A DNA stretch of 64,000 nt from positions 598,829 to 662,828 of the forward strand of contig NW_003314292.1 of the NCBI RefSeq assembly GCF_000143415.4, read 5' to 3'. The stretch comes from Selaginella moellendorffii (Eukaryota; Plantae; Lycopodiophyta). The notes under the pieces were generated by a model, which was not told where the DNA came from, did no database searches, and worked only from the letters and a program-made list of their open reading frames with translations. A program made the position numbers and the translations under genes. Shown here one piece after another: positions 3,455-56,978 of this stretch. Position 1 is the first letter of the stretch, and each line of letters begins with the position of its first letter.

Positions 3455-3715
3455 GCTGACGTGTCGTCATATTCCCACGTGGCCTGCCACGTGGGGCCCA
3501 CGTTCCCGCCGACCTACAGATCACCACGTCACGTCAGCCGTTGACGGGTGACGCCCACTTTACCTTTCTTTATTGGTTGACTACTGGCGGTGTGAAAGGG
3601 GAAAGGGGCGGGGGAATTTTACCTACGTGGCACGGCACGCTCCACGTGGGCCCCAGGTCAATAAAGTGACCGACCGACCTGGCATGGGGCCCCATGCGCA
3701 TGTGGCATGGGCCCC
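3455..3715. promoter_or_regulatory. Dense ACGT/G-box and TCP-like site cluster (candidate distal enhancer)
   Basis: About 8 ACGT cores (CCACGTGGC, GCCACGTGGG, CACGTCACGTCA, TACGTGGC, CCACGTGGG) and several GGGCCC/GGCCCA motifs in ~260 bp. Confidence 0.5.
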
Positions 3716-22724: not shown

Positions 22725-22798
22725 TGCTCTCTCTGAGAGTCGAACTCAGGACCTCCCGCTTACTAAACGGGTGCTCTGACCAACTGAGCTAAAAGAGC
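22725..22798 (-). tRNA. tRNA-Thr(AGT)
   Basis: GCTCTTTTAGCTCAGTTGGTCAGAGCA CCCGT-TTAGTAA-GCGGG AGGTCCTGAGTTCGACTCTCAGAGAGAGCA cloverleaf; T6 terminator downstream. Confidence 0.95.
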
Positions 22799-27232: not shown

Positions 27233-28926
27233 TGTAAGCGACTAAATTTTCCATTCTACTTTAGTTACTTAACCACACCTCCGACCACTTGGAGGAGTCT
27301 CATTCACAACCTCCATCAGTCCAATTCAGGACTTGGGACTTGCTAGCCCCAAGAATGGCATCCATGCCACTCCACACTTGCACCTGGTCCAAGTGCTCCA
27401 CGTGTCCGGTCTTGAGACCGACACCCAAAGGTACCACTGACATCTCGGCCCGTTACGCTAAGGCCATGCCCATTCACCTTTGCTGCACTAGTGGTTCAAC
27501 ACCACTTGCATCACCACCTCGTCTCTCCAAGACTGGGCCATGTGTCCACGAGTGGTCATCCTAGATCCACTCCTTAGCATCCTTAGGATGCCCACAGACC
27601 TGGGGAGTTGCCTTCCCCAAAGTCCCTTTGTCAGTTCCTACCAAGTCCCTTTCTGCCCTTGGCCGTGTTTGCCAACACTGCCACTGGATCGAGGCCCACA
27701 GGCCCGACCACTAAGTCCCACGGTCCTCTGGGACTTCCTCACCACATGACTGTGTCCTTGGTCACTACCCCAGAGGACTACTCCTCTTCCTTTCCACAGT
27801 CTGGGCCTTTGGGACAACATTTCGGAACACCGTGGCCTTACGCGAGCCACCTGGGTACTCTCCCCACCTATCGCCTTTAGGTGCTCTAGCCATGGGCTTA
27901 GAGCGAGGTTCTATTGAGCCACGCTTGGTATCCAAGTAGGTAGTGCCACCCACACTTGGACTGGGAGCATCGGCCAGTCGATCTCCCGGGGGAACTAGAG
28001 CCGGCTCTTGAACACTTCACCAAGCTACCCCGCTTGTCGGTCCGTATTCACTATAGTCTTGGACTTCCCAGTGGTCAGTTCATCACCCAACACTGGGTCT
28101 GGCCTTCCTGGGCCAAACTGGCCTTTCCTGGCCAAACTGGCTCCACTACAGTCCTCCCCCTACTATACTTTTGGAGCTCACCAAACCCCCCAGGGTCTGG
28201 GAGACGAACGCTTTGGGCTTTCACCCTCTCAGGCTCCGGACTCGGACTTGGACTCGGACTCGGACTCGGACTCGGACTCGGACTCGGACTCGGACTCGGA
28301 TTCGGACTCGGACTCGGGCTCGGGCTCGGTCTTGGCCTCGGCCTCGGTCTCGGTCTCGGTCCCGATCTCGGTCTCGGTCTCGGTCTCGGTCCCAGTCTCG
28401 GTTCCGGTCTCGGTTTCGACTTCGGACTCCATCTCGGACTCCATCTCGGACTCCATCTTGGGTCCATCTCAGGTCCATCTCGGACTCCATCTCGGACTCC
28501 ATCTCGGGTCCATCTCGGACTCCATCTCGGACTCCATTTCGGGTCCATCTCGGGTCCACCTCGGACTCCACCTCGGACTCCATCTCGGACTCCATCTCGG
28601 GTCCATCTCGGACTCCATCTCGGACTCCATCTCGGACTCCATCTCGGGTCCATCTCGGACTCCATCTCGGACTCCATCTCGAGTCCATCTCGGACACTCC
28701 CACGTGTCATGTGTTGGTCCTTTTGGGTCCCTTTTTGGAGCCTTGCCTTTTGCTCGCTTCGTGCTCGTTCCTCGAGCACTTTGTTGGGAGTTCCACTCCC
28801 GCTCTTGACTTTTCAAGTCAGAGCTTTTGGTCCAAACGTTTTACGCTCGTTTGGCTCTCGCTTCGGCCACTACCATGTGGCGCCCTTCCGGCTCCACTTT
28901 GGGGCCTAGGGATTTTGTGTCTCACA
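27233..28926 (-). repeat. 3' LTR (1694 bp)
   Basis: Near-identical to 33035-34716; TG..CA ends. Confidence 0.95.
28236..28695. repeat. Compound minisatellite in LTR: (GGACTC)n, (GGTCTC)n, (GGACTCCATCTC / GGGTCCATCTC)n
   Basis: Directly visible tandem array. Confidence 0.95.
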
Positions 28927-33034: not shown

Positions 33035-34716
33035 TGTAAGCGACTAAATTTTCCATTCTACTTTAGTCACTTAACCACACCTCCGACCACTTGGAGGAGT
33101 CTCATTCACAACCTCCATCAGTCCAATTCAGGACTTGGGACTTGCTAGCCCCAAGAATGGCATCCATGCCACTCCACACTTGCACCTGGTCCAAGTGCTC
33201 CACGTGTCCGGTCCTGAGACCGACACCCAAAGGTACCACTGACATCTCGGCCCGTTACGCTAAGGCCATGCCCATTCACCTTTGCTGCACTAGTGGTTCA
33301 ACACCACTTGCATCACCACCTCGTCTCTCCAAGACTGGGCCATGTGTCCACGAGTGGTCATCCTAGATCCACTCCTTAGCATCCTTAGGATGCCCACAGA
33401 CCTGGGGAGTTGCCTTCCCCAAAGTCCCTTTGTCAGTTCCTACCAAGTCCCTTTCTGCCCTTGGCCGTGTTTGCCAACACTGCCACTGGATCGAGGCCCA
33501 CAGGCCCGACCACTAAGTCCCACGGTCCTCTGGGACTTCCTCACCACATGACTGTGTCCTTGGTCACTACCCCAGAGGACTGCTCCTCTTCCTTTCCACA
33601 GTCTGGGCCTTTGGGACAACATTTCGGAACACCGTGGCCTTACGCGAGCCACCTGGGTACTCTCCCCACCTATCGCCTTTAGGTGCTCTAGCCATGGGCT
33701 TAGAGCGAGGTTCTATTGAGCCACGCTTGGTATCCAAGTAGGTAGTGCCACCCACACTTGGACTGGGAGCATCGGCCAGTCGATCTCCCGGGGGAACTAG
33801 AGCCGGCTCTTGAACACTTCACCAAGCTACCCCGCTTGTCGGTCCGTATTCACTATAGTCTTGGACTTCCCAGTGGTCAGTTCATCACCCAACACTGGGT
33901 CTGGCCTTCCTGGGCCAAACTAGCCTTTCCTGGCCAAACTGGCTCCACTGCAGTCCTCCCCCTACTATACTTTTGGAGCTCACCAAACCCCCCAGGGTCT
34001 GGGAGACGAACGCTTTGGGCTTTCACCCTCTCAGGCTCCGGACTCGGACTCGGACTCGGACTCGGACTCGGATTTGGACTCGGACTCGGGCTCGGGCTCG
34101 GTCTTGGCCTCGGCCTCGGTCTCGGTCTCGGTCTCGGTCCCAATCTCGGTCTCGGTCTCGGTCTCGGTCCCGGTCTCGGTTCCGGTCTCGGTCTCGACTT
34201 CGGACTCCATCTCGGACTCCATCTCGGACTCCATCTCGGACTCCATCTCGGACTCCATCTTGGGTCCATCTCGGGTCCATCTCGGACTCCATCTCAGACT
34301 CCATCTCGGGTCCATCTCGGACTCCATCTCGGACTCCATTTCGGGTCCATCTCGGGTCCACCTCGGACTCCACCTCGGACTCCATCTCGGACTCCATCTC
34401 GGGTCCATCTCGGACTCCATCTCGGACTCCATCTCGGGTCCATCTCGGACTCCATCTCGGACTCCATCTCGAGTCCATCTCGGACACTCCCACGTGTCAT
34501 GTGTTGGTCCTTTTGGGTCTCTTTTTGGAGCCTTGCCTTTTGCTCGCTTCGTGCTCGTTCCTCGAGCACTTTGTTGGGAGTTCCACTCCCGCTCTTGACT
34601 TTTCAAGTCGGAGCTTTTGGTCCAAACGTTTTACGCTCGTTTGGCTCTCGCTTCGGCCACTACCATGTGGCGCCCTTCCGGCTCCACTTTGGGGCCTAGG
34701 GATTTTGTGTCTCACA
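33035..34716 (-). repeat. 5' LTR (1682 bp)
   Basis: Adjacent to the PBS; near-identical to 27233-28926. Confidence 0.95.
34038..34485. repeat. Compound minisatellite in the second LTR, with different unit counts
   Basis: Directly visible tandem array. Confidence 0.95.
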
Positions 34717-40435: not shown

Positions 40436-42101
40436 ATGGCATTCGTGCTGACGACGAGTAGCGCGGTCTCGCAGGGCACATTCTTGTCTCTCAGGGTTTT
40501 GTGCTCGAGAAGCGTCCTTCCCAGAGGTATGTGTGAGGCAATTTGGTTTCGCAGCGATGGATGATAGATATTTCGAATGCCGCTCCAGGTCGAAGGCGAT
40601 GGAGGCGCTATTGCTCTCGCATCGAGCACAGCGAGGCAGAGGACGGGATGTTCTCGAAATTTGGCGATTTTCATCCAGCCAGCAGCGCGAACAACAGCGC
40701 GAGTAGCATCGGGAAGCTCCAGGTATTCTCCAAAGCTCCCAAGGATCATAGCTCCCGAAAGGTTTCTAGAGAAGAGAATCCCCTGGCGTCTTTTGGCTTG
40801 AAGGTTAAGAGGGACAGCCAAGGAAGGAAGATCGACATAGCCAAGTCGCTCTCCAAAATGCTGCCATACATTGTGGTGGCCACTGCTGCCGCGGCGCTCA
40901 TCCACCCAGCTACATTTGCGTGGTACGTAAGAGAATTTCTCACCGAGAACTTTTGAGATTGATCTAGCTTTCTTCTGTCCATCCAAATCAAGGTTTTATC
41001 ACTGAGATTGGATATAAACTTTGATGAGCTTTCAGGGTCAGAAAAGAGCACTATGCTCCGGCACTTGGAGGAATCATGCTGTCTATAGGCGTCCAGCTTT
41101 CCATATCCGACTTCGCGATTGTTTTGCAGAGGTGAGCTTACAATCCATGCTTTTTTGCACTGAGTAGTTCTTTCTTTTCTTTTTTCGATTCAGGCCTTTG
41201 CCTCTATGCATGGGCTACGTGCTTCAATACGTGATGAAGCCAATACTCGGGTTTTTGGTAGTGAGAGGCTTCGGTGTTCCTCCTTCGTTTGCCGCGGGTC
41301 TCATTCTCACGGCTTGTGTTGCGGGTGCTCAGCTCTCCAGCTACGCGGCTTACTTAAGTGAAGGCGACATAGCTCTCAGCATCATGCTTACGAGCATCAG
41401 CACGATTACTTCTGTGATCGTCACGCCTTTTCTTACGCAGTTCTTGATTGGCTCGGTTGTGCCAGTGGACGTCGTAGCCATGGCGAAATCAATTCTCCAG
41501 GTAAACTATGGCCTCGAGATTTCATGTAACTTAAACCCTTTCCTTGTTTCAGGTGGTCTTTCTTCCGGTTCTAACAGGACTTACTCTCAACACTTACGCA
41601 AAGCCGCTGGTGGACAGAATACGTCCCGTGATGCCACTGGTCGCCATGGTTTGCACGTCGCTGTGCATTGGAAGCCCTCTGGCTCTCAACCAGTCGAAGA
41701 TCATATCAATGGAAGGTCTCCAGCTTTTGTTCCCGGTGCTGGTATTCCACGCCCTTGGCTTTGGTCTTGGCTACTTCATCTCGAGACTTCCCTTCTGGAG
41801 GTGACTAAAGTTCTTCGCTTCTAGTTCCGTTAATCCTTACTTCGAGTTCCTTTTTGTGCTGTATCTCAGGCAAAATCACAAGGTGTCAAGAACACTGTCA
41901 CTTTGCACTGGAATGCAAAGCTCGACGCTAGCAATGCTCCTGGCCACCCAGTTTTTGGGCGACACTCAAGCAGTTCCTCCGGCTTGCTCGGTGGTGATAA
42001 TGGCAGTGATGGGATTGACGCTGGCTACTTGGTGGGGAAAAGAAGAATCAAACAACAAGACGCCATCGTCGTCTTCCTCCAGCGCTCCAGTCTTCGCGTA
42101 G
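40436..42101 (+). CDS. BASS3: Plastid bile acid:Na+ symporter family protein (BASS3-like)
   Basis: Transit-like N-terminus; HPATFAW, YAPALGGIMLSIG, VAGAQLSSYAAYLSEGDIALS, CTGMQSSTLA, VPPACSVV. Confidence 0.88.
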
Positions 42102-42184
42102 CACAAGAAATTTTTACAGGCAGCAGTTTGTAAATATGAGATATTTATCTCGAAGAACTGGAAGTTCTTCTAAATTCCCAACCG

Positions 42185-42246
42185 TCCACGTGGCAGAGTA
42201 ACGAACCGCCACGTGGAATAAAACCGCCGTCAGCAGGCATTTATAG
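42185..42246 (+). promoter_or_regulatory. Paired ABRE/G-boxes and TATA-like element of the 74-aa gene
   Basis: CCACGTGGC (~42186), GCCACGTGG (~42207), TTTATAG (~42240). Confidence 0.6.
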
Positions 42247-42381
42247 ATCACCAAGCAAAGAGGGTTTTGTGCCATTCTTTCCGTGGGCTTTTTCGGTTTT
42301 CGAGGTAGGGTTCTATCTCTCGATCGCTTCGATCGATCTCCTCCTTGTGCTCTCGCCTTTCGCGCAGGCGCGCTTGCTAGA

Positions 42382-42606
42382 ATGTCTGGATCGGGCGAGA
42401 AGGGCTACTCCTACAAGGGCTCTGGGACGAACTCCCAGGGAAATCACTACTGCTCTCGCGATTATGGCGCCTCGGCCCCAAATCCCAACGCTTACCACTA
42501 TTCCAACCAGAATGGATCCTACTACTACTCCAATCCCAATGGATCGACGTACTACAACAGCGGCAAAGGCAGCGCGACCTACACTCCGCCCGCGAGCAAG
42601 AAGTGA
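42382..42606 (+). CDS. 74-aa Tyr/Asn/Ser/Gly-rich small protein of unknown function
   Basis: ATG at 42382 after a probable 5'UTR intron (GTAGGG..CGCAG); strongly C-ending codon bias; internal YxYSNxNGS repeats. Confidence 0.8.
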   Translation: MSGSGEKGYSYKGSGTNSQGNHYCSRDYGASAPNPNAYHYSNQNGSYYYSNPNGSTYYNSGKGSATYTPPASKK

Positions 42607-42843
42607 TCGCATCGCAGTGAAGAAATTTCCTTTCATGTGTGTCTGTGTGTTTCTTTGATTCGCGAGCGCCATCGCGGCTTCTTGTGTTGCTTTCTCTCTT
42701 GGAATGCCAGTAAAAGCTTAATCGTGATTATCGTGGTAAATAGGTTTAGTTAACTAAACAAATCCGACCATTTGGGCGGGACATTTTAAAGCCAACGGCT
42801 AGTGTATTTGCCCTTTTGCCCTTGTTTCTTTTAGGTTTTGGGA

Positions 42844-45800
42844 ATGGCAGCGATGTTAGATTTCTTGCGTCGAGCGTCCAGAGAGGGCTGTGGCGGCGAT
42901 CTAGCTGATGACGCTGCTCGCCAGGATCCGATGATCGAAGAAGCGTCCGCGGCAGAGGATTCCAGGGTCGCGGCCAGGGATGACGAAGAAATCACGGTTT
43001 TCTCGAGCCCGGTGCGAGATTTCGAGCTGGATTTGGGAGATGGAGAGGAAATTCTTAGCAGTTTCTGCGAGGGGAACGAGCTCTCGTTCAATTACATTCC
43101 AGGTATGTTCTTGTTCTTGCGAGAAGCATCGCGAAATACTCTGCCGCCATGCCTATGCCTATTTCCAGACAAGGTCGTGGCCGCGATAAATGCCGGTGGC
43201 TCATCGATTCTAGATACATCTTTCGGCATCGATTTCGTGGACGATCGATTTTTCTCTGGTGGAGATGTGCTTAGAACTGCCGAAGATATCGTTGATGCGC
43301 AGGAGCCTTCGCTATACCGCACAGCAAGGTATGGGGAGGTTACTTACGCCCTAGATGGACTGGAAAGTGGAGATTACTACGTGGATATCCACTTTGCCGA
43401 GATTATTTTCACGAATGGTCCTCCTGGGATGAGGATCTTTGACGTCTACATTCAGGACGAGAAGGTGAGAGTCTTTGGAATTTTTTCATGTTCTTTTCAC
43501 TTTTTACGTTTGTCCTTCTTGCGTATAGGTTGTCTCGGATCTTGACGTCTATGGACGGGTGGGGTCGAACAGGCCCTTGATTTTGCTAAACGTGCGAGCT
43601 GCAGTCAACGGCGGTGTTCTTACTTTGGCATTTCGTGGCGTTGTTGGAAATCCCACCATCAGCGCCATCTGCGTTCACAGAGCTCCTCCTCTTGGTGCGT
43701 TTCTTCAATGTAGTAAATAATTTGTTGATTTTTTTGTTTGATCCAGCTAAGCGAACCGGTCGTAAGCCACGACCAATTTACGAGCTTGCGTTGGAAAACT
43801 GCCAGAAGCAGAATGCTCGCAGACTCACGTTTTGTGAGCAGGTTCGTAATGCAGCGCTACTTTTTCTCAAACTATTAATGATGGTTTGGATTGCTTCAGA
43901 TGAGGGATAAAAGTCGAGGAGCAGTTACTGAAAGCGAGCAAAGATTGGAAGAACTCAGAAACGAGTGCCATCAGGCCTGGATTTCTGTTCAAGAATCCAA
44001 TCGCCAAGCTGAAAAATTACGTGATGAACTTTCCGTGAAGTCTCTTACTGTCGATACACTCGGTACGATTATCTAGATTGAGTTAAGACTTTATGCTTTT
44101 TGTTTTGTTATCAGCAAATGCCGTGGAAACTCAGGTGCTGGAGCTAAGAGATTTGAAGGAAAAAGAAATGAACGAAAAGACGAAGTTGAAGCTAGCCGTC
44201 AGTGATGCCCAGAGGAAAGTCGAGGTTAGCGTCCATTTCTTTCTCTGTCTTCTGATACTTATTCATTTGTTGATAATCCAGGAACTCAGAATACTCTATA
44301 GTCTCCTGTCCAAGGACGCAAGAGATTGTATATGCTCCTTTCCAGATCCCCATGGCATGGTTTCTGCGGTTCAAGCTTTAGGTAAGGCCGAGCGCAGTTG
44401 GACTTACTTCAATGCTGAATATATCGTTTTTGTCAGTGAATGAACAGAAGGAGTTAAAGAAAAGACTACTAGACGAGAGTCAAGAACGGAAGTTTTTGTA
44501 CAACAAGTTGATTGAAATGAAAGGCAAGTTTGCTACATCTGTATAATTGATTTCATGAGTTTTCTTCCAGGGAACGTTAGGGTGTTTTGCAGATGCAGAC
44601 CGTTGAATGCATCAGAAGCGTCAGCATCGTCGGTGTCACTAGTCGAGTTTGACTCCGCTAGAGAGAATGAACTCGTCATTCGGGCTGGCACCAATCCGAA
44701 AAAGCTCTACAAGTTTGATCGAGTGTTCACTCCCGAAGACGATCAACGTGAGTATATGGCAAAGTCTATATTCACAAGCTGATCCTCGTTTCCGTTGTGC
44801 AGCTGAAGTGTTTGCAGACACGTCTCCGGTCGTTGTATCTGTCCTGGATGGCTACAACGTGTGCATATTTGCCTACGGACAAACAGGTACTGGCAAAACA
44901 TTCACGATGGAAGGCATTCCAGGAAACCGAGGTGTCAACTATCGTACATTGGAGGAACTTTTTCGACTATCTACTGTACGCAAAGGAGAGGTCAACTATG
45001 AGATAAAAGTTAGTGTTCTAGAAGTTTATAATGAGCAGATCCGAGACTTGTTGACAACACCATCTCAAGCTGGTCTGGCGCCAAAGAGGTAGGCAAAGCT
45101 ATTATTGCGGCTTGCTAACACATTTTGTTCAGGCTAGAAATTAAGCAAGACGCTGATGGTGGCCATCGTGTTCCTGGCCTCGTCGAGGCTGAGGTACACA
45201 GCATGACAGAAGTATGGGAGGTTCTCCAAAGCGGGAGCGCTGCTCGAGCTGTTGGCTCTACAAATGCTAACGAACATAGTAGCCGTTCTCACTGGTTTGT
45301 ATAACGTCTTGAAGTTTAAATTTTGGTCTCTAATGATGCCGTTGCAGCATGTTGTGCGTGAAAGTAAGAGGCGAGAACATGACTACAGGAGAATGTACTC
45401 GCAGCAAGCTTTGGCTTGTCGATCTTGCTGGAAGCGAGAGAGTTGCAAAAAGTGATGTTCAGGGTGATCGCCTGAAAGAAGCTCAGAACATCAACAAGTC
45501 GTTATCAGCCCTGGGAGATGTTATTCACGCTCTAACGACGAAAAGTAACCACGTGCCTTACAGGTAATTCAGGTCTAGAGCAACGCAGACATTAATAAGT
45601 CGGGCATTGTGCAGGAACTCGAAGTTAACACATCTTCTGCAAGACTCGCTTGGTATGTCTGGCGTTCCCTCTTCAATTGTCCATTCATTCTTTTGTGCAG
45701 GAGGAGAATCGAAGACTCTTATGTTCGTACAGATAAGCCCCACCGAGGCTGATGTCGGGGAAACGTTGTGCTCCTTAAATTTTGCTAGCAGAGTACGTGG

Positions 45801-56897: not shown

Positions 56898-56978
56898 TGT
56901 TGACAGTGGGATTCGAACCCACGCCCTTTCGGACCAGAACCTTAATCTGGCGCCTTAGACCAACTCGGCCATGTCAAC
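56898..56978 (-). tRNA. tRNA-Leu(AAG)
   Basis: GTTGACATGGCCGAGTTGGTCTAAGGCG CCAGA-TTAAGGT-TCTGG, long variable arm, GTTCGAATCC; T6 terminator. Confidence 0.95.

What the first reader, a model, noticed from the sequence alone, without database searches (positions are those of the whole stretch)
42185..42606. Stress-type promoter driving a 74-aa fungal-like Y/N/S/G repeat microprotein (HGT candidate)
Seen: compact gene MSGSGEKGYSYKGSGTNSQGNHYCSRDYGASAPNPNAYHYSNQNGSYYYSNPNGSTYYNSGKGSATYTPPASKK with a strongly C-ending codon bias, an apparent 5'UTR intron and two perfect G-box/ABRE cores just upstream of a TATA-like element. Recall (unverified): the SGTNSQGNHYCSRDYG...YHYSNxxGSYYYSNPNGSTYYN motif resembles a family of small uncharacterised fungal proteins, and I know of no angiosperm equivalent. 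Inference: an ABA/desiccation-induced, possibly beta-hairpin or amyloid-prone protective protein, acquired from fungi or lost in seed plants.
Basis: partly seen in the sequence, partly recalled or inferred. Interest (0 to 1): 0.78.

Follow-up and report, generated by a model that had tools for sequence, protein, structure and literature searches.

The report
Fungal-type tyrosine-rich microprotein gene in Selaginella
A small, actively transcribed gene in the spikemoss Selaginella moellendorffii encodes a 74-residue tyrosine/asparagine-rich protein that is about 75-80% identical to an unnamed protein family of fungi and has no named counterpart in other land plants, so it most likely entered the plant by gene transfer from a fungus, though ancient inheritance with many losses is not excluded.

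Summary
The ORF 42382-42606 (+) encodes the quoted 74 aa. Two CCACGTGG boxes, a TATA-like element and a 63-nt 5'UTR intron (42305-42367) are present. Spliced RNA contigs from four studies cover the gene.

The window is Selaginella moellendorffii scaffold GL377596.1, and the neighbours are plant-specific genes, so this is not contamination.

The protein belongs to an unnamed family with no Pfam entry. The Selaginella protein is of the "GNHYCSRDYG" type. This type is found across Fungi and, sporadically, in Acanthamoeba and the whitefly Bemisia. A second type occurs in stramenopiles and the green alga Chloropicon. No other land plant appeared among the named hits.

Selaginella is as Dikarya-like as Dikarya proteins are to each other (73.9% mean identity). 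It lacks the phase-0 intron shared by the amoebal, chytrid, basidiomycete and algal genes that I checked.

Transfer from a fungus is favoured, at about 0.6. The tree is unresolved, however: an AU test does not reject a position outside fungi (p 0.59), and database cover of other lycophytes and ferns is incomplete.

AlphaFold predicts a folded six-strand beta-meander (pLDDT 85), not a disordered protein. ABA or desiccation induction and function remain untested.

The parts
42186..42193 (+). G-box 1, CCACGTGG; holds ABRE core ACGTGGC at 42188-42194
   Evidence: also intact in the variant allele carried by run X2
42209..42216 (-). G-box 2, CCACGTGG; ABRE core ACGTGGC on the minus strand at 42208-42214
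42240..42247 (+). TATA-like element TTTATAGA
   Evidence: read from the sequence; its role is inferred
42289..42304 (+). Exon 1 (5'UTR), minimum extent. The true start is probably 42270-42289. Contigs of the upstream BASS gene also run into it.
   Evidence: the loose end GCTTTTTCGGTTTTCG precedes the splice in X1 and X2; contigs cannot fix a start
42305..42367 (+). 5'UTR intron, GT..AG, 63 nt
   Evidence: splice shown by loose ends on both sides in RNA contigs of X1 and X2
42368..42793 (+). Exon 2: 14 nt of 5'UTR, the CDS and the 3'UTR. The 3' end is approximate, because contigs end at 42727, 42765, 42793 and 42841.
   Evidence: table 8
42382..42606 (+). CDS, 74 aa plus stop, with no intron
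   Evidence: It carries every one of the 13 invariant and 23 nearly invariant family positions.

Best explanation
This is a real, transcribed nuclear gene of Selaginella moellendorffii. It lies in the 740-nt gap between a BASS transporter gene and a malectin-kinesin gene. It encodes a 7.9-kDa cytosolic protein (no signal peptide by eye; not run through a predictor) of an unnamed, extremely conserved eukaryotic microprotein family, in its fungal sequence type.

The most likely origin is horizontal transfer from a Dikarya-like fungus into the Selaginella lineage as an intronless copy. That copy could have come from a cDNA-like intermediate or from an intronless donor gene. Domestication followed: a plant promoter with two ABRE/G-box sites and a TATA-like element, a new 5'UTR intron and host-like codon use. 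The transfer is not recent, because synonymous sites are saturated.

The protein is predicted to fold into a six-strand antiparallel beta-meander built almost wholly of Tyr, Asn, Ser, Gly and Thr. Its C-terminal part consists of 9-residue strand-turn repeats (xYYxSNxNGS).

Inferred, not shown: bZIP factors acting on the G-boxes (ABA or light signalling) drive it, and the tyrosine-lined sheet works by binding a conserved partner or ligand, or by self-association, rather than as a disordered protectant.
For: Host context. The protein is called on GCA_000143415.2 scaffold GL377596.1 (1.85 Mb). Its neighbours are Myb_CC_LHEQLE, SBF/BASS, malectin-kinesin, Aha1 and a malectin-like LRR kinase.

Transcription. 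Contigs from four runs of four studies cover the CDS. These runs show GT..AG joints in both neighbours, so they are RNA.

Family. There are 221 word-search hits, the best at 76-82% identity. HMMER finds 402 cluster representatives at E<=1e-3. No family member scanned has a Pfam hit.

Range. The fungal type occurs in Dikarya, a chytrid, Allomyces, Acanthamoeba and Bemisia. The other type occurs in stramenopiles and Chloropicon. No other plant is named.

Similarity. Selaginella's mean identity to 56 Dikarya proteins is 73.9%, rank 19 of 56 among Dikarya themselves. The chytrid scores 66.8% and Allomyces 58.0%. The Stramenopile+Chloropicon split has 99/92 support, with Selaginella on the fungal side. 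A Selaginella+Chloropicon clade costs 61 lnL units, p-AU 0.043.

Introns. A phase-0 intron at TNSQ|GN is shared by Acanthamoeba, Geranomyces, Rickenella and Chloropicon and is absent from Selaginella. The Bemisia copy is also intronless.

Constraint. The end branch is 0.057. Between the window and the X2 allele there are 0 differences in the 225-nt CDS against 5 in about 235 nt of 3'UTR.

Fold. pLDDT 84.7 with six strands.
Against: The tree does not resolve fungal classes. The AU test does not reject Selaginella lying outside all fungi plus Acanthamoeba (p 0.59). That topology would also fit vertical descent.

The family is old and slow-evolving, so high identity alone does not prove transfer.

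Absence from other plants rests on databases whose cover is incomplete. The exact 74-aa product is not on record even though at least 20 runs (RNA by the tool's guess; four were shown spliced) hold part of the stretch. Only the best 120 of 221 hits and the best 150 of 402 were listed.

No donor lineage can be named. Third-codon identity is 0.46-0.63 to every taxon, including Chloropicon.

Induction by ABA or drought, translation and function were not tested. Fold matches are at noise level (best Z 6.5).
Confidence: 0.6

Rival explanations
1. Ancient eukaryotic gene inherited vertically. The family was present in early eukaryotes. Selaginella kept a slowly evolving, ancestral-looking copy, while nearly all other Viridiplantae lost theirs. 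The intron was lost secondarily.
For: The family spans Fungi, Amoebozoa, Stramenopiles and a green alga. An identical phase-0 intron position is shared across these groups, which argues for great age. A position of Selaginella outside all fungi plus Acanthamoeba is not rejected (p 0.59). Synonymous sites are saturated. Codon use is host-like. Cover of non-seed plants in the protein databases is incomplete.
Against: It needs many independent losses: chlorophytes, each streptophyte algal line, bryophytes and euphyllophytes. The only other green-lineage member, Chloropicon, carries the stramenopile type and sits among diatoms. Selaginella+Chloropicon is disfavoured (delta lnL 61, p 0.043). Selaginella is more Dikarya-like than chytrid or blastoclad fungi are. 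Isolated intronless copies of the fungal type in Bemisia, and a Dikarya-like copy in Acanthamoeba, show that the family does turn up sporadically outside fungi.
Confidence: 0.27
2. The ORF is transcribed but is a decaying or neutral relic, a domesticated-looking insertion with no function for the plant.
For: No proteomic or Ribo-seq evidence was available. Contigs cannot give expression levels or conditions. Part of the signal is continuous with the upstream BASS 3'UTR (X1 record 2, X2 record 7).
Against: The ORF is intact. It carries every one of the 13 invariant and 23 nearly invariant family positions. The terminal branch is very short (0.057). There is no CDS difference between alleles, while the 3'UTR differs at 5 sites. 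It has its own spliced 5'UTR and no upstream ATG in the leader.
Confidence: 0.08
3. Fungal contamination or an assembly artefact in the Selaginella genome.
For: Fungal-type sequence; the best hits are all fungi.
Against: It lies inside a 1.85-Mb scaffold between plant-specific genes less than 300 nt away on either side. RNA contigs from four studies match at 99-100%, including the UTRs. They are continuous with the neighbouring plant gene's 3'UTR and carry allelic variants. The gene structure differs from the fungal genes.
Confidence: 0.01

Closest known systems
Unnamed fungal hypothetical proteins of 70-85 aa (e.g. Terfezia boudieri L211DRAFT_842378, 'Pc16g06240-like', Rickenella BD410DRAFT_712098) and Acanthamoeba ACA1_366970
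   Same: Full-length collinear match at 76-82% identity, with the same motifs GTNSQGNHYCSRDYG ... YHYSN-x-NGSYYYSNPNGSTYYN-x-G-x-G ... YTPP.
   Different: The Selaginella CDS lacks the phase-0 intron at TNSQ|GN and the second intron after YHYSN. Instead it has a 5'UTR intron and a G-box promoter. None of these proteins has a known function.
Stramenopile/Chloropicon subtype of the same family (diatoms, oomycetes, Aurantiochytrium, Heterosigma; Chloropicon primus A3770_01p06390)
   Same: Same C-terminal repeat core (SYHYSN-x-NGSYYYSN-x-NGSTYYN) and the same first intron position.
   Different: The HYCSRDYGxxAxNxN segment is replaced by xYNTPGGTNxxGGS. Identity to Selaginella is only 54-58%. The subtype is separated by a 99/92 branch.
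Single-layer beta-meanders: CPAP/SAS-4 TCP10 (G-box) domain and MORN repeats
   Same: The predicted topology is an antiparallel strand-turn-strand sheet without helices. These are the nearest fold rows after the family's own clusters (Foldseek E 0.26-1; Z 5.7-5.9; Atlas TM about 0.6).
   Different: No sequence or Pfam relation. The scores are at the level expected by chance for a common arrangement. The repeat length is 9 aa, against about 23 aa for MORN (from my own knowledge).
OCRE domain (RBM5/RBM10) and bacterial choline/cell-wall-binding repeats
   Same: Tyrosine-rich short strand-turn repeats of the DGSYYY type. One lichen-fungus member is labelled 'OCRE domain-containing' by UniRef. There is a weak local match to a choline-binding repeat (E 0.45).
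   Different: No Pfam OCRE or CW_binding hit for any member, including the labelled one. OCRE does not appear in the fold lists.
LEA proteins, dehydrins and hydrophilins; FUS-like low-complexity domains
   Same: Small, very hydrophilic (GRAVY -1.41) and rich in Gly, Ser, Asn and Tyr. ABRE-type promoter motifs are present.
   Different: Predicted ordered (pLDDT about 90 over residues 8-68). Positionally conserved at about 75-80% across phyla. No LEA or dehydrin Pfam match.
Documented microbe-to-plant gene transfers in early land plants
   Same: A gene of fungal type sits in a non-seed plant and has acquired a plant promoter and intron. Plants taking genes from fungi and bacteria is an established theme (e.g. 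PMC12454661, abstract as listed; Physcomitrium cases from my own knowledge).
   Different: This gene was not found in the papers searched. Phylogenetic nesting, the usual criterion, is not met here.

Membership tests
Unnamed Y/N/S/G microprotein family, fungal 'GNHYCSRDYG' type | Length 70-90 aa and full-length collinear similarity | tested here: met
   E 3e-26 to 1e-17; 61-82% identity over 80-100% of the query; HMMER full scan
Unnamed Y/N/S/G microprotein family, fungal 'GNHYCSRDYG' type | Invariant and near-invariant residues (G20 N21 R26 H39 Y40 S41 N42 Y49 N51 S55 Y57 G63; C24 D27 Y28 G29 and others) | tested here: met
   All are present in the window protein
Unnamed Y/N/S/G microprotein family, fungal 'GNHYCSRDYG' type | Phase-0 intron between TNSQ and GN | tested here: not met
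   Present in Acanthamoeba, Geranomyces, Rickenella and Chloropicon. Absent from the Selaginella CDS. Also absent from one fungus-like contig, L002, and from Bemisia, so it is not strictly defining.
Horizontally acquired gene (usual criteria) | Physically integrated among host genes, and expressed | tested here: met
Horizontally acquired gene (usual criteria) | Absent from the recipient's relatives | tested here: inconclusive
   No other land plant among the named hits. However, the listings are truncated and cover of non-seed plants is incomplete.
Horizontally acquired gene (usual criteria) | Nested within the donor clade with support | tested here: inconclusive
   On the fungal side of a 99/92 split, with Dikarya-level identity. 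However, a position outside fungi is not rejected (p 0.59).
OCRE domain (PF17780) | Match to the Pfam model | tested here: not met
   No hit at E<=10 for the window protein or for P0111, P0190, P0222 and P0014, and none at E<=1 for the 82 members
MORN repeat / TCP10_C single-layer sheets | Pfam match or a fold match above chance | tested here: inconclusive
   No Pfam hit. Foldseek E 0.26-1, Z 5.7-5.9 and TM about 0.6 are all within the noise range the tools state.
LEA / dehydrin / hydrophilin | Family motifs (K-segment and the like) and predicted disorder | tested here: not met
   No Pfam match. Predicted ordered, pLDDT 84.7.
ABA-responsive (ABRE) promoter | Two or more ACGTGGC elements close to the TATA box | tested here: met
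   42188 (+) and 42208 (-), 26-52 nt upstream of TTTATAGA
ABA-responsive (ABRE) promoter | Induction by ABA or dehydration | not testable with these tools
   Only contigs of coded runs without conditions were available. Depth is not a measure of expression.

The most novel reading that the evidence does not exclude
The gene is one landing of a small, ancient, aliphatic-free 'tyrosine-ladder' protein that has moved repeatedly between eukaryotic kingdoms: fungus to spikemoss, fungus to whitefly, fungus to Acanthamoeba and stramenopile to Chloropicon. In Selaginella it was rewired to ABA/bZIP control as a stress or dormancy protein with a new kind of fold chemistry, namely a stable sheet with no hydrophobic aliphatic core.
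Probability: 0.3. Interest if true: 0.75.

Novelty: new member of a known kind. Interest (0 to 1): 0.55.

Why it matters
If the transfer reading holds, this is a clean, compact example of a eukaryote-to-plant gene transfer. The steps of domestication are all visible in 600 bp: loss of the donor introns, gain of a 5'UTR intron, a G-box/TATA promoter and host codon use. It sits in a lineage, the lycophytes, for which I know of few such cases.

Independently of origin, it draws attention to an unnamed protein family. Members are about 75 aa. 76% of core residues are Ser, Tyr, Asn, Gly or Thr, and only 1.6% are Leu, Ile, Val, Phe, Trp or Met. The family is nevertheless 70-80% identical across fungal phyla and is confidently predicted to fold. 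It has no Pfam entry, no solved structure and no paper in the library searched.

A family this conserved, in hundreds of fungi and in diatoms and oomycetes, must do something specific. Selaginella and model fungi offer tractable systems in which to find out what.

Tried and rejected
- **Sequence searches.** Pfam on the window protein, 82 aligned members, 4 odd-taxon members and 10 longer members found no family and no fused domain. PDB by sequence, with the single protein and with a profile, gave only chance-level hits to antibody CDRs and a choline-binding repeat.
- **Fold searches.** Foldseek PDB, VIA-align wide and Atlas gave nothing above noise. The protein Atlas by features returned only 'hypothetical protein' fungal clusters.
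- **RNA and bacterial scans.** Rfam on 41800-43000 found nothing. The bacterial promoter/terminator scan does not apply to a plant.
- **Literature.** Locus tags, sequence motifs and Selaginella/fungal-HGT terms found no paper on this gene or family.
- **Earlier notes of this scan.** Only a duplicate first-reader note was found; searches by words and by sequence were blank.
- **Third word-search.** With Allomyces as query it found only 7 candidates and added nothing.
- **Readings rejected.** Contamination. A disordered LEA-like protein. OCRE membership. A recent transfer from a sampled donor. The overlapping ORFs in other frames or on the other strand (42269-42658 +, 42313-42672 -) are by-products of the biased codons; homology fixes the frame.
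- **Unknown hits.** P0028 sits beside a fungus-looking Ser-rich GPI-type protein, so I did not count it as a plant homologue. P0032 lies on a 681-bp contig of an unidentified NCBI assembly and could not be read.
- **Neighbour genes.** Exons of four foreign genes were joined only inside a script, to locate their introns.

Full report
**1. What is there.**
- The + strand carries an ATG at 42382 and a stop at 42604-42606.
- Upstream lie two palindromic CCACGTGG boxes, at 42186-42193 and 42209-42216. The whole 64-kb window has six such octamers against 0.40 expected, and none of 100 shuffles reached six.
- Each box contains the ABRE core ACGTGGC, one on each strand.
- A TATA-like TTTATAGA follows at 42240-42247.
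- The coding region has GC3 0.74 and C3 0.51, with Tyr TAC in 10 of 12 codons. Host ORFs in the window have GC3 0.53-0.72, so the gene is at the upper end of the host range. The C-ending bias is real but does not look foreign.

**2. Organism and context.**
- An exact look-up of the annotated product places it on GCA_000143415.2, scaffold GL377596.1 (1.85 Mb). This is the Selaginella moellendorffii assembly; I name the species from my own knowledge of the accession.
- The called neighbours are a Myb_CC_LHEQLE factor, a PAPS-reductase/MoCF gene, an SBF/BASS transporter ending at 42101, a malectin-kinesin starting at 42844, Aha1 and a malectin-like LRR kinase.
- Several of these architectures are, to my knowledge, plant-specific. 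The gene sits in a 740-nt gap between two of them, which rules out contamination.

**3. Transcription and gene structure.**
- Twenty public runs from seven studies hold part of the stretch. I laid four runs from four studies on 40500-45500.
- All four show GT..AG joints in one or both neighbouring genes, so they are RNA. All four have contigs over the CDS: 42381-42727, 42381-42841, 42394-42793 and 42350-42765.
- Loose ends on both sides of a splice join ...TTTTCGAG (42304) to GCGCGCTTGCTA (42368). The 5'UTR intron is therefore real: 42305-42367, 63 nt. The neighbours' introns are 47-113 nt.
- In two runs a contig begins with GCTTTTTCGGTTTTCG (from 42289) before the splice. Exon 1 therefore starts at or before 42289, although contigs cannot fix a start.
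- Contigs of the BASS 3'UTR also run on to 42170, 42277, 42305 (then spliced) and 42333. This means either that the two transcription units overlap or that there is some read-through.
- The leader has no upstream ATG.
- The allele in run X2 differs from the window by a 10-nt insertion after 42170, two bases at 42182-42183 and five sites in the 3'UTR. It shows no difference in the 225-nt CDS or in the G-boxes. This is weak evidence of constraint.
- Rfam finds nothing in the region.

**4. The protein family.**
- No Pfam model matches the protein or any of the 96 family members scanned. No PDB sequence matches above chance.
- The word-indexed search gave 221 hits. The best 120 are almost all named fungi, at 61-82% identity over the full length. 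They span Pezizomycetes, Eurotiomycetes, Sordariomycetes, Dothideomycetes, Lecanoromycetes, Orbiliomycetes and Taphrinomycotina. They also include many Basidiomycota and a chytrid, plus Acanthamoeba castellanii at 78%.
- The exhaustive HMMER scan found 402 cluster representatives at E<=1e-3.
  - The fungal "GNHYCSRDYG" type also occurs in Allomyces (Blastocladiomycota) and, unexpectedly, in the whitefly Bemisia tabaci.
  - A second type ("GNxYNTPGGTN") occurs in diatoms, oomycetes, Aurantiochytrium, Paraphysomonas and Heterosigma, and in one green alga, Chloropicon primus.
- No land plant other than the window's own protein appears among the named rows.
- The core of the family is 21% Ser, 18% Tyr, 15% Asn, 14% Gly and 8% Thr. 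Only 1.6% is Leu, Ile, Val, Phe, Trp or Met, and 40 of 82 members have none of these. The Selaginella protein itself has none apart from Met1.
- Even so, 13 columns are invariant and 23 more are at least 90% conserved across 82 sequences.

**5. Origin: evidence for transfer.**
- In a maximum-likelihood tree of 78 sequences (83 columns), the stramenopiles plus Chloropicon are split off with 99/92 support. Selaginella falls in the fungal cloud with a very short end branch of 0.057.
- Forcing Selaginella and Chloropicon together, the clade that simple vertical descent within green plants would predict, costs 61 log-likelihood units. The p-AU is 0.043, a marginal rejection.
- Over residues 8-72, Selaginella averages 73.9% identity to 56 Dikarya proteins. 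That ranks 19th of 56 when each Dikarya member is scored in the same way.
  - It is above the Ascomycota-Basidiomycota mean of 70.2%.
  - It is well above the chytrid (66.8%) and Allomyces (58.0%).
  - Acanthamoeba behaves the same way, at 75.6%.
- A phase-0 intron between TNSQ and GN is shared by Acanthamoeba, the chytrid Geranomyces, the basidiomycete Rickenella and Chloropicon. Many Dikarya have a second intron after YHYSN. The Selaginella CDS has neither.
- The Bemisia copy, on a 79.7-Mb chromosome record, is also intronless.
- Isolated, intronless, fungal-type copies in two unrelated hosts fit cDNA-like or intronless-donor transfers. One fungus-like environmental contig is also intronless.

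**6. Origin: evidence against, and limits.**
- The tree does not recover fungal classes. The AU test does not reject a tree with Selaginella outside all fungi and Acanthamoeba (p 0.59). Rooted between Amorphea and the rest, that topology would be compatible with vertical inheritance.
- The shared intron shows that the family is old.
- Third-codon identity at identical residues is 0.46-0.63 to every taxon, Chloropicon included. Synonymous sites are therefore saturated and no recent donor is in hand.
- The absence of plant relatives is limited by what the databases hold. The exact 74-aa product is not on record in the gene-position collection, although at least 20 runs hold part of the stretch. 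Only the best 120 and 150 rows of the searches are listed.
- Absence from seed plants, whose annotated proteomes are in NCBI and UniRef, is fairly safe. Absence from other lycophytes and ferns is not established.
- My weights are: transfer from a Dikarya-like fungus about 0.6; ancient inheritance with many losses about 0.27; a transcribed relic without function about 0.08; an artefact about 0.01.

**7. Structure and likely mode of action.**
- With the 82-sequence alignment, AlphaFold2 gives mean pLDDT 84.7 and pTM 0.63, with about 90 over residues 8-68. It predicts six strands (10-16, 22-27, 36-41, 47-50, 56-59, 65-68) and no helix.
- The last four strands are 9-residue strand-turn repeats: AYHYSNQNGS, YYYSNPNGS, TYYNSGKGS, ATYTPP.
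- Fold searches return the family's own clusters and then single-layer sheets: the TCP10/G-box domain of CPAP, MORN proteins and phage spike prisms. Their scores (Foldseek E >= 0.26; best Z 6.5; TM about 0.6) are ones the tools themselves rate as chance-level for a common arrangement.
- I therefore claim neither a known fold family nor a new fold.
- The protein is basic (pI 9.2), very hydrophilic (GRAVY -1.41) and has no signal peptide by eye.
- Inference: such strong positional conservation of surface tyrosines and asparagines points to a specific partner, a specific ligand or ordered self-association. It does not point to the non-specific shielding expected of LEA-type proteins.
- The promoter motifs make control by bZIP factors plausible. 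The two YACGTGGC cores are of the strong ABRE type, but G-boxes also serve light signalling. No expression condition could be read from the coded contig-only runs.

**8. Novelty.**
- No paper in the held library mentions the locus tags, the motifs or this transfer. The scan's own notes hold only a duplicate first reading.
- Fungus-to-plant transfer is a known kind of event, and the gene is already annotated as a hypothetical protein. I therefore class it as a new member of a known kind.
- What is more unusual is the family itself and its scatter across kingdoms.

**9. Compliance.** No step needed referral.

Noticed in passing
L008:8001-8279 (Bemisia tabaci chromosome record OU963863.1): A divergent, intronless member of the fungal-type family (P0190, 92 aa, about 53% identical to Dikarya) is the only gene called in 16 kb of a whitefly chromosome. 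It is a candidate fungus-to-insect transfer in a species known, from my own knowledge, for acquired genes.
   Followed up: partly
L007:1501-1813 (Chloropicon primus CP031034.1): The only other green-lineage member carries the stramenopile sequence type and groups among diatoms. It has the family's conserved phase-0 intron (121 nt). This suggests a separate stramenopile-alga exchange, or a rare retention.
   Followed up: partly
L004:3001-3314, L005:1501-1832, L006:1501-1854, L007:1501-1813: The intron between TNSQ and GN (phase 0) sits at the identical position in an amoebozoan, a chytrid, a basidiomycete and a green alga. Acanthamoeba's protein is more Dikarya-like (75.6%) than chytrid or blastoclad proteins are.
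   Followed up: partly
window 41868-42333: RNA contigs of the upstream BASS gene continue past its stop (42101), through both G-boxes and the TATA-like element, into exon 1 of the microprotein gene. One of them uses the 42305-42367 intron. This indicates overlapping units or read-through transcription in a very compact interval.
   Followed up: partly
window 42170-42183, 42380 and 42711-42879: Allelic or strain variants appear in RNA contigs. There is a 10-nt insertion (GTTGTGACCG) after 42170, and changes at 42182-42183 just before G-box 1. A G/C polymorphism lies 2 nt before the ATG, and there are six substitutions in the 3'UTR, the spacer and the first bases of the kinesin CDS. The microprotein CDS shows none.
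   Followed up: partly
window 3459-3649: A second cluster of three perfect CCACGTGG boxes (3475, 3487, 3642), with further ACGTGKC cores, has no long ORF beside it. It may be another G-box/ABRE-rich promoter whose gene I did not identify.
   Followed up: no
window 27956-28909 and 33758-34699: Two ORFs of 317 and 313 aa, about 5.8 kb apart, begin with the same 25 residues (LDWEHRPVDLPGELEPALEHFTKLP...) and have no Pfam match. They are probably two copies of a repeat or the ends of a mobile element.
   Followed up: no
window 22725-22798 and 56898-56978: tRNA-Thr(AGT) and tRNA-Leu(AAG) genes on the minus strand. The latter is the subject of another first-reader note (s1-363867).
   Followed up: no
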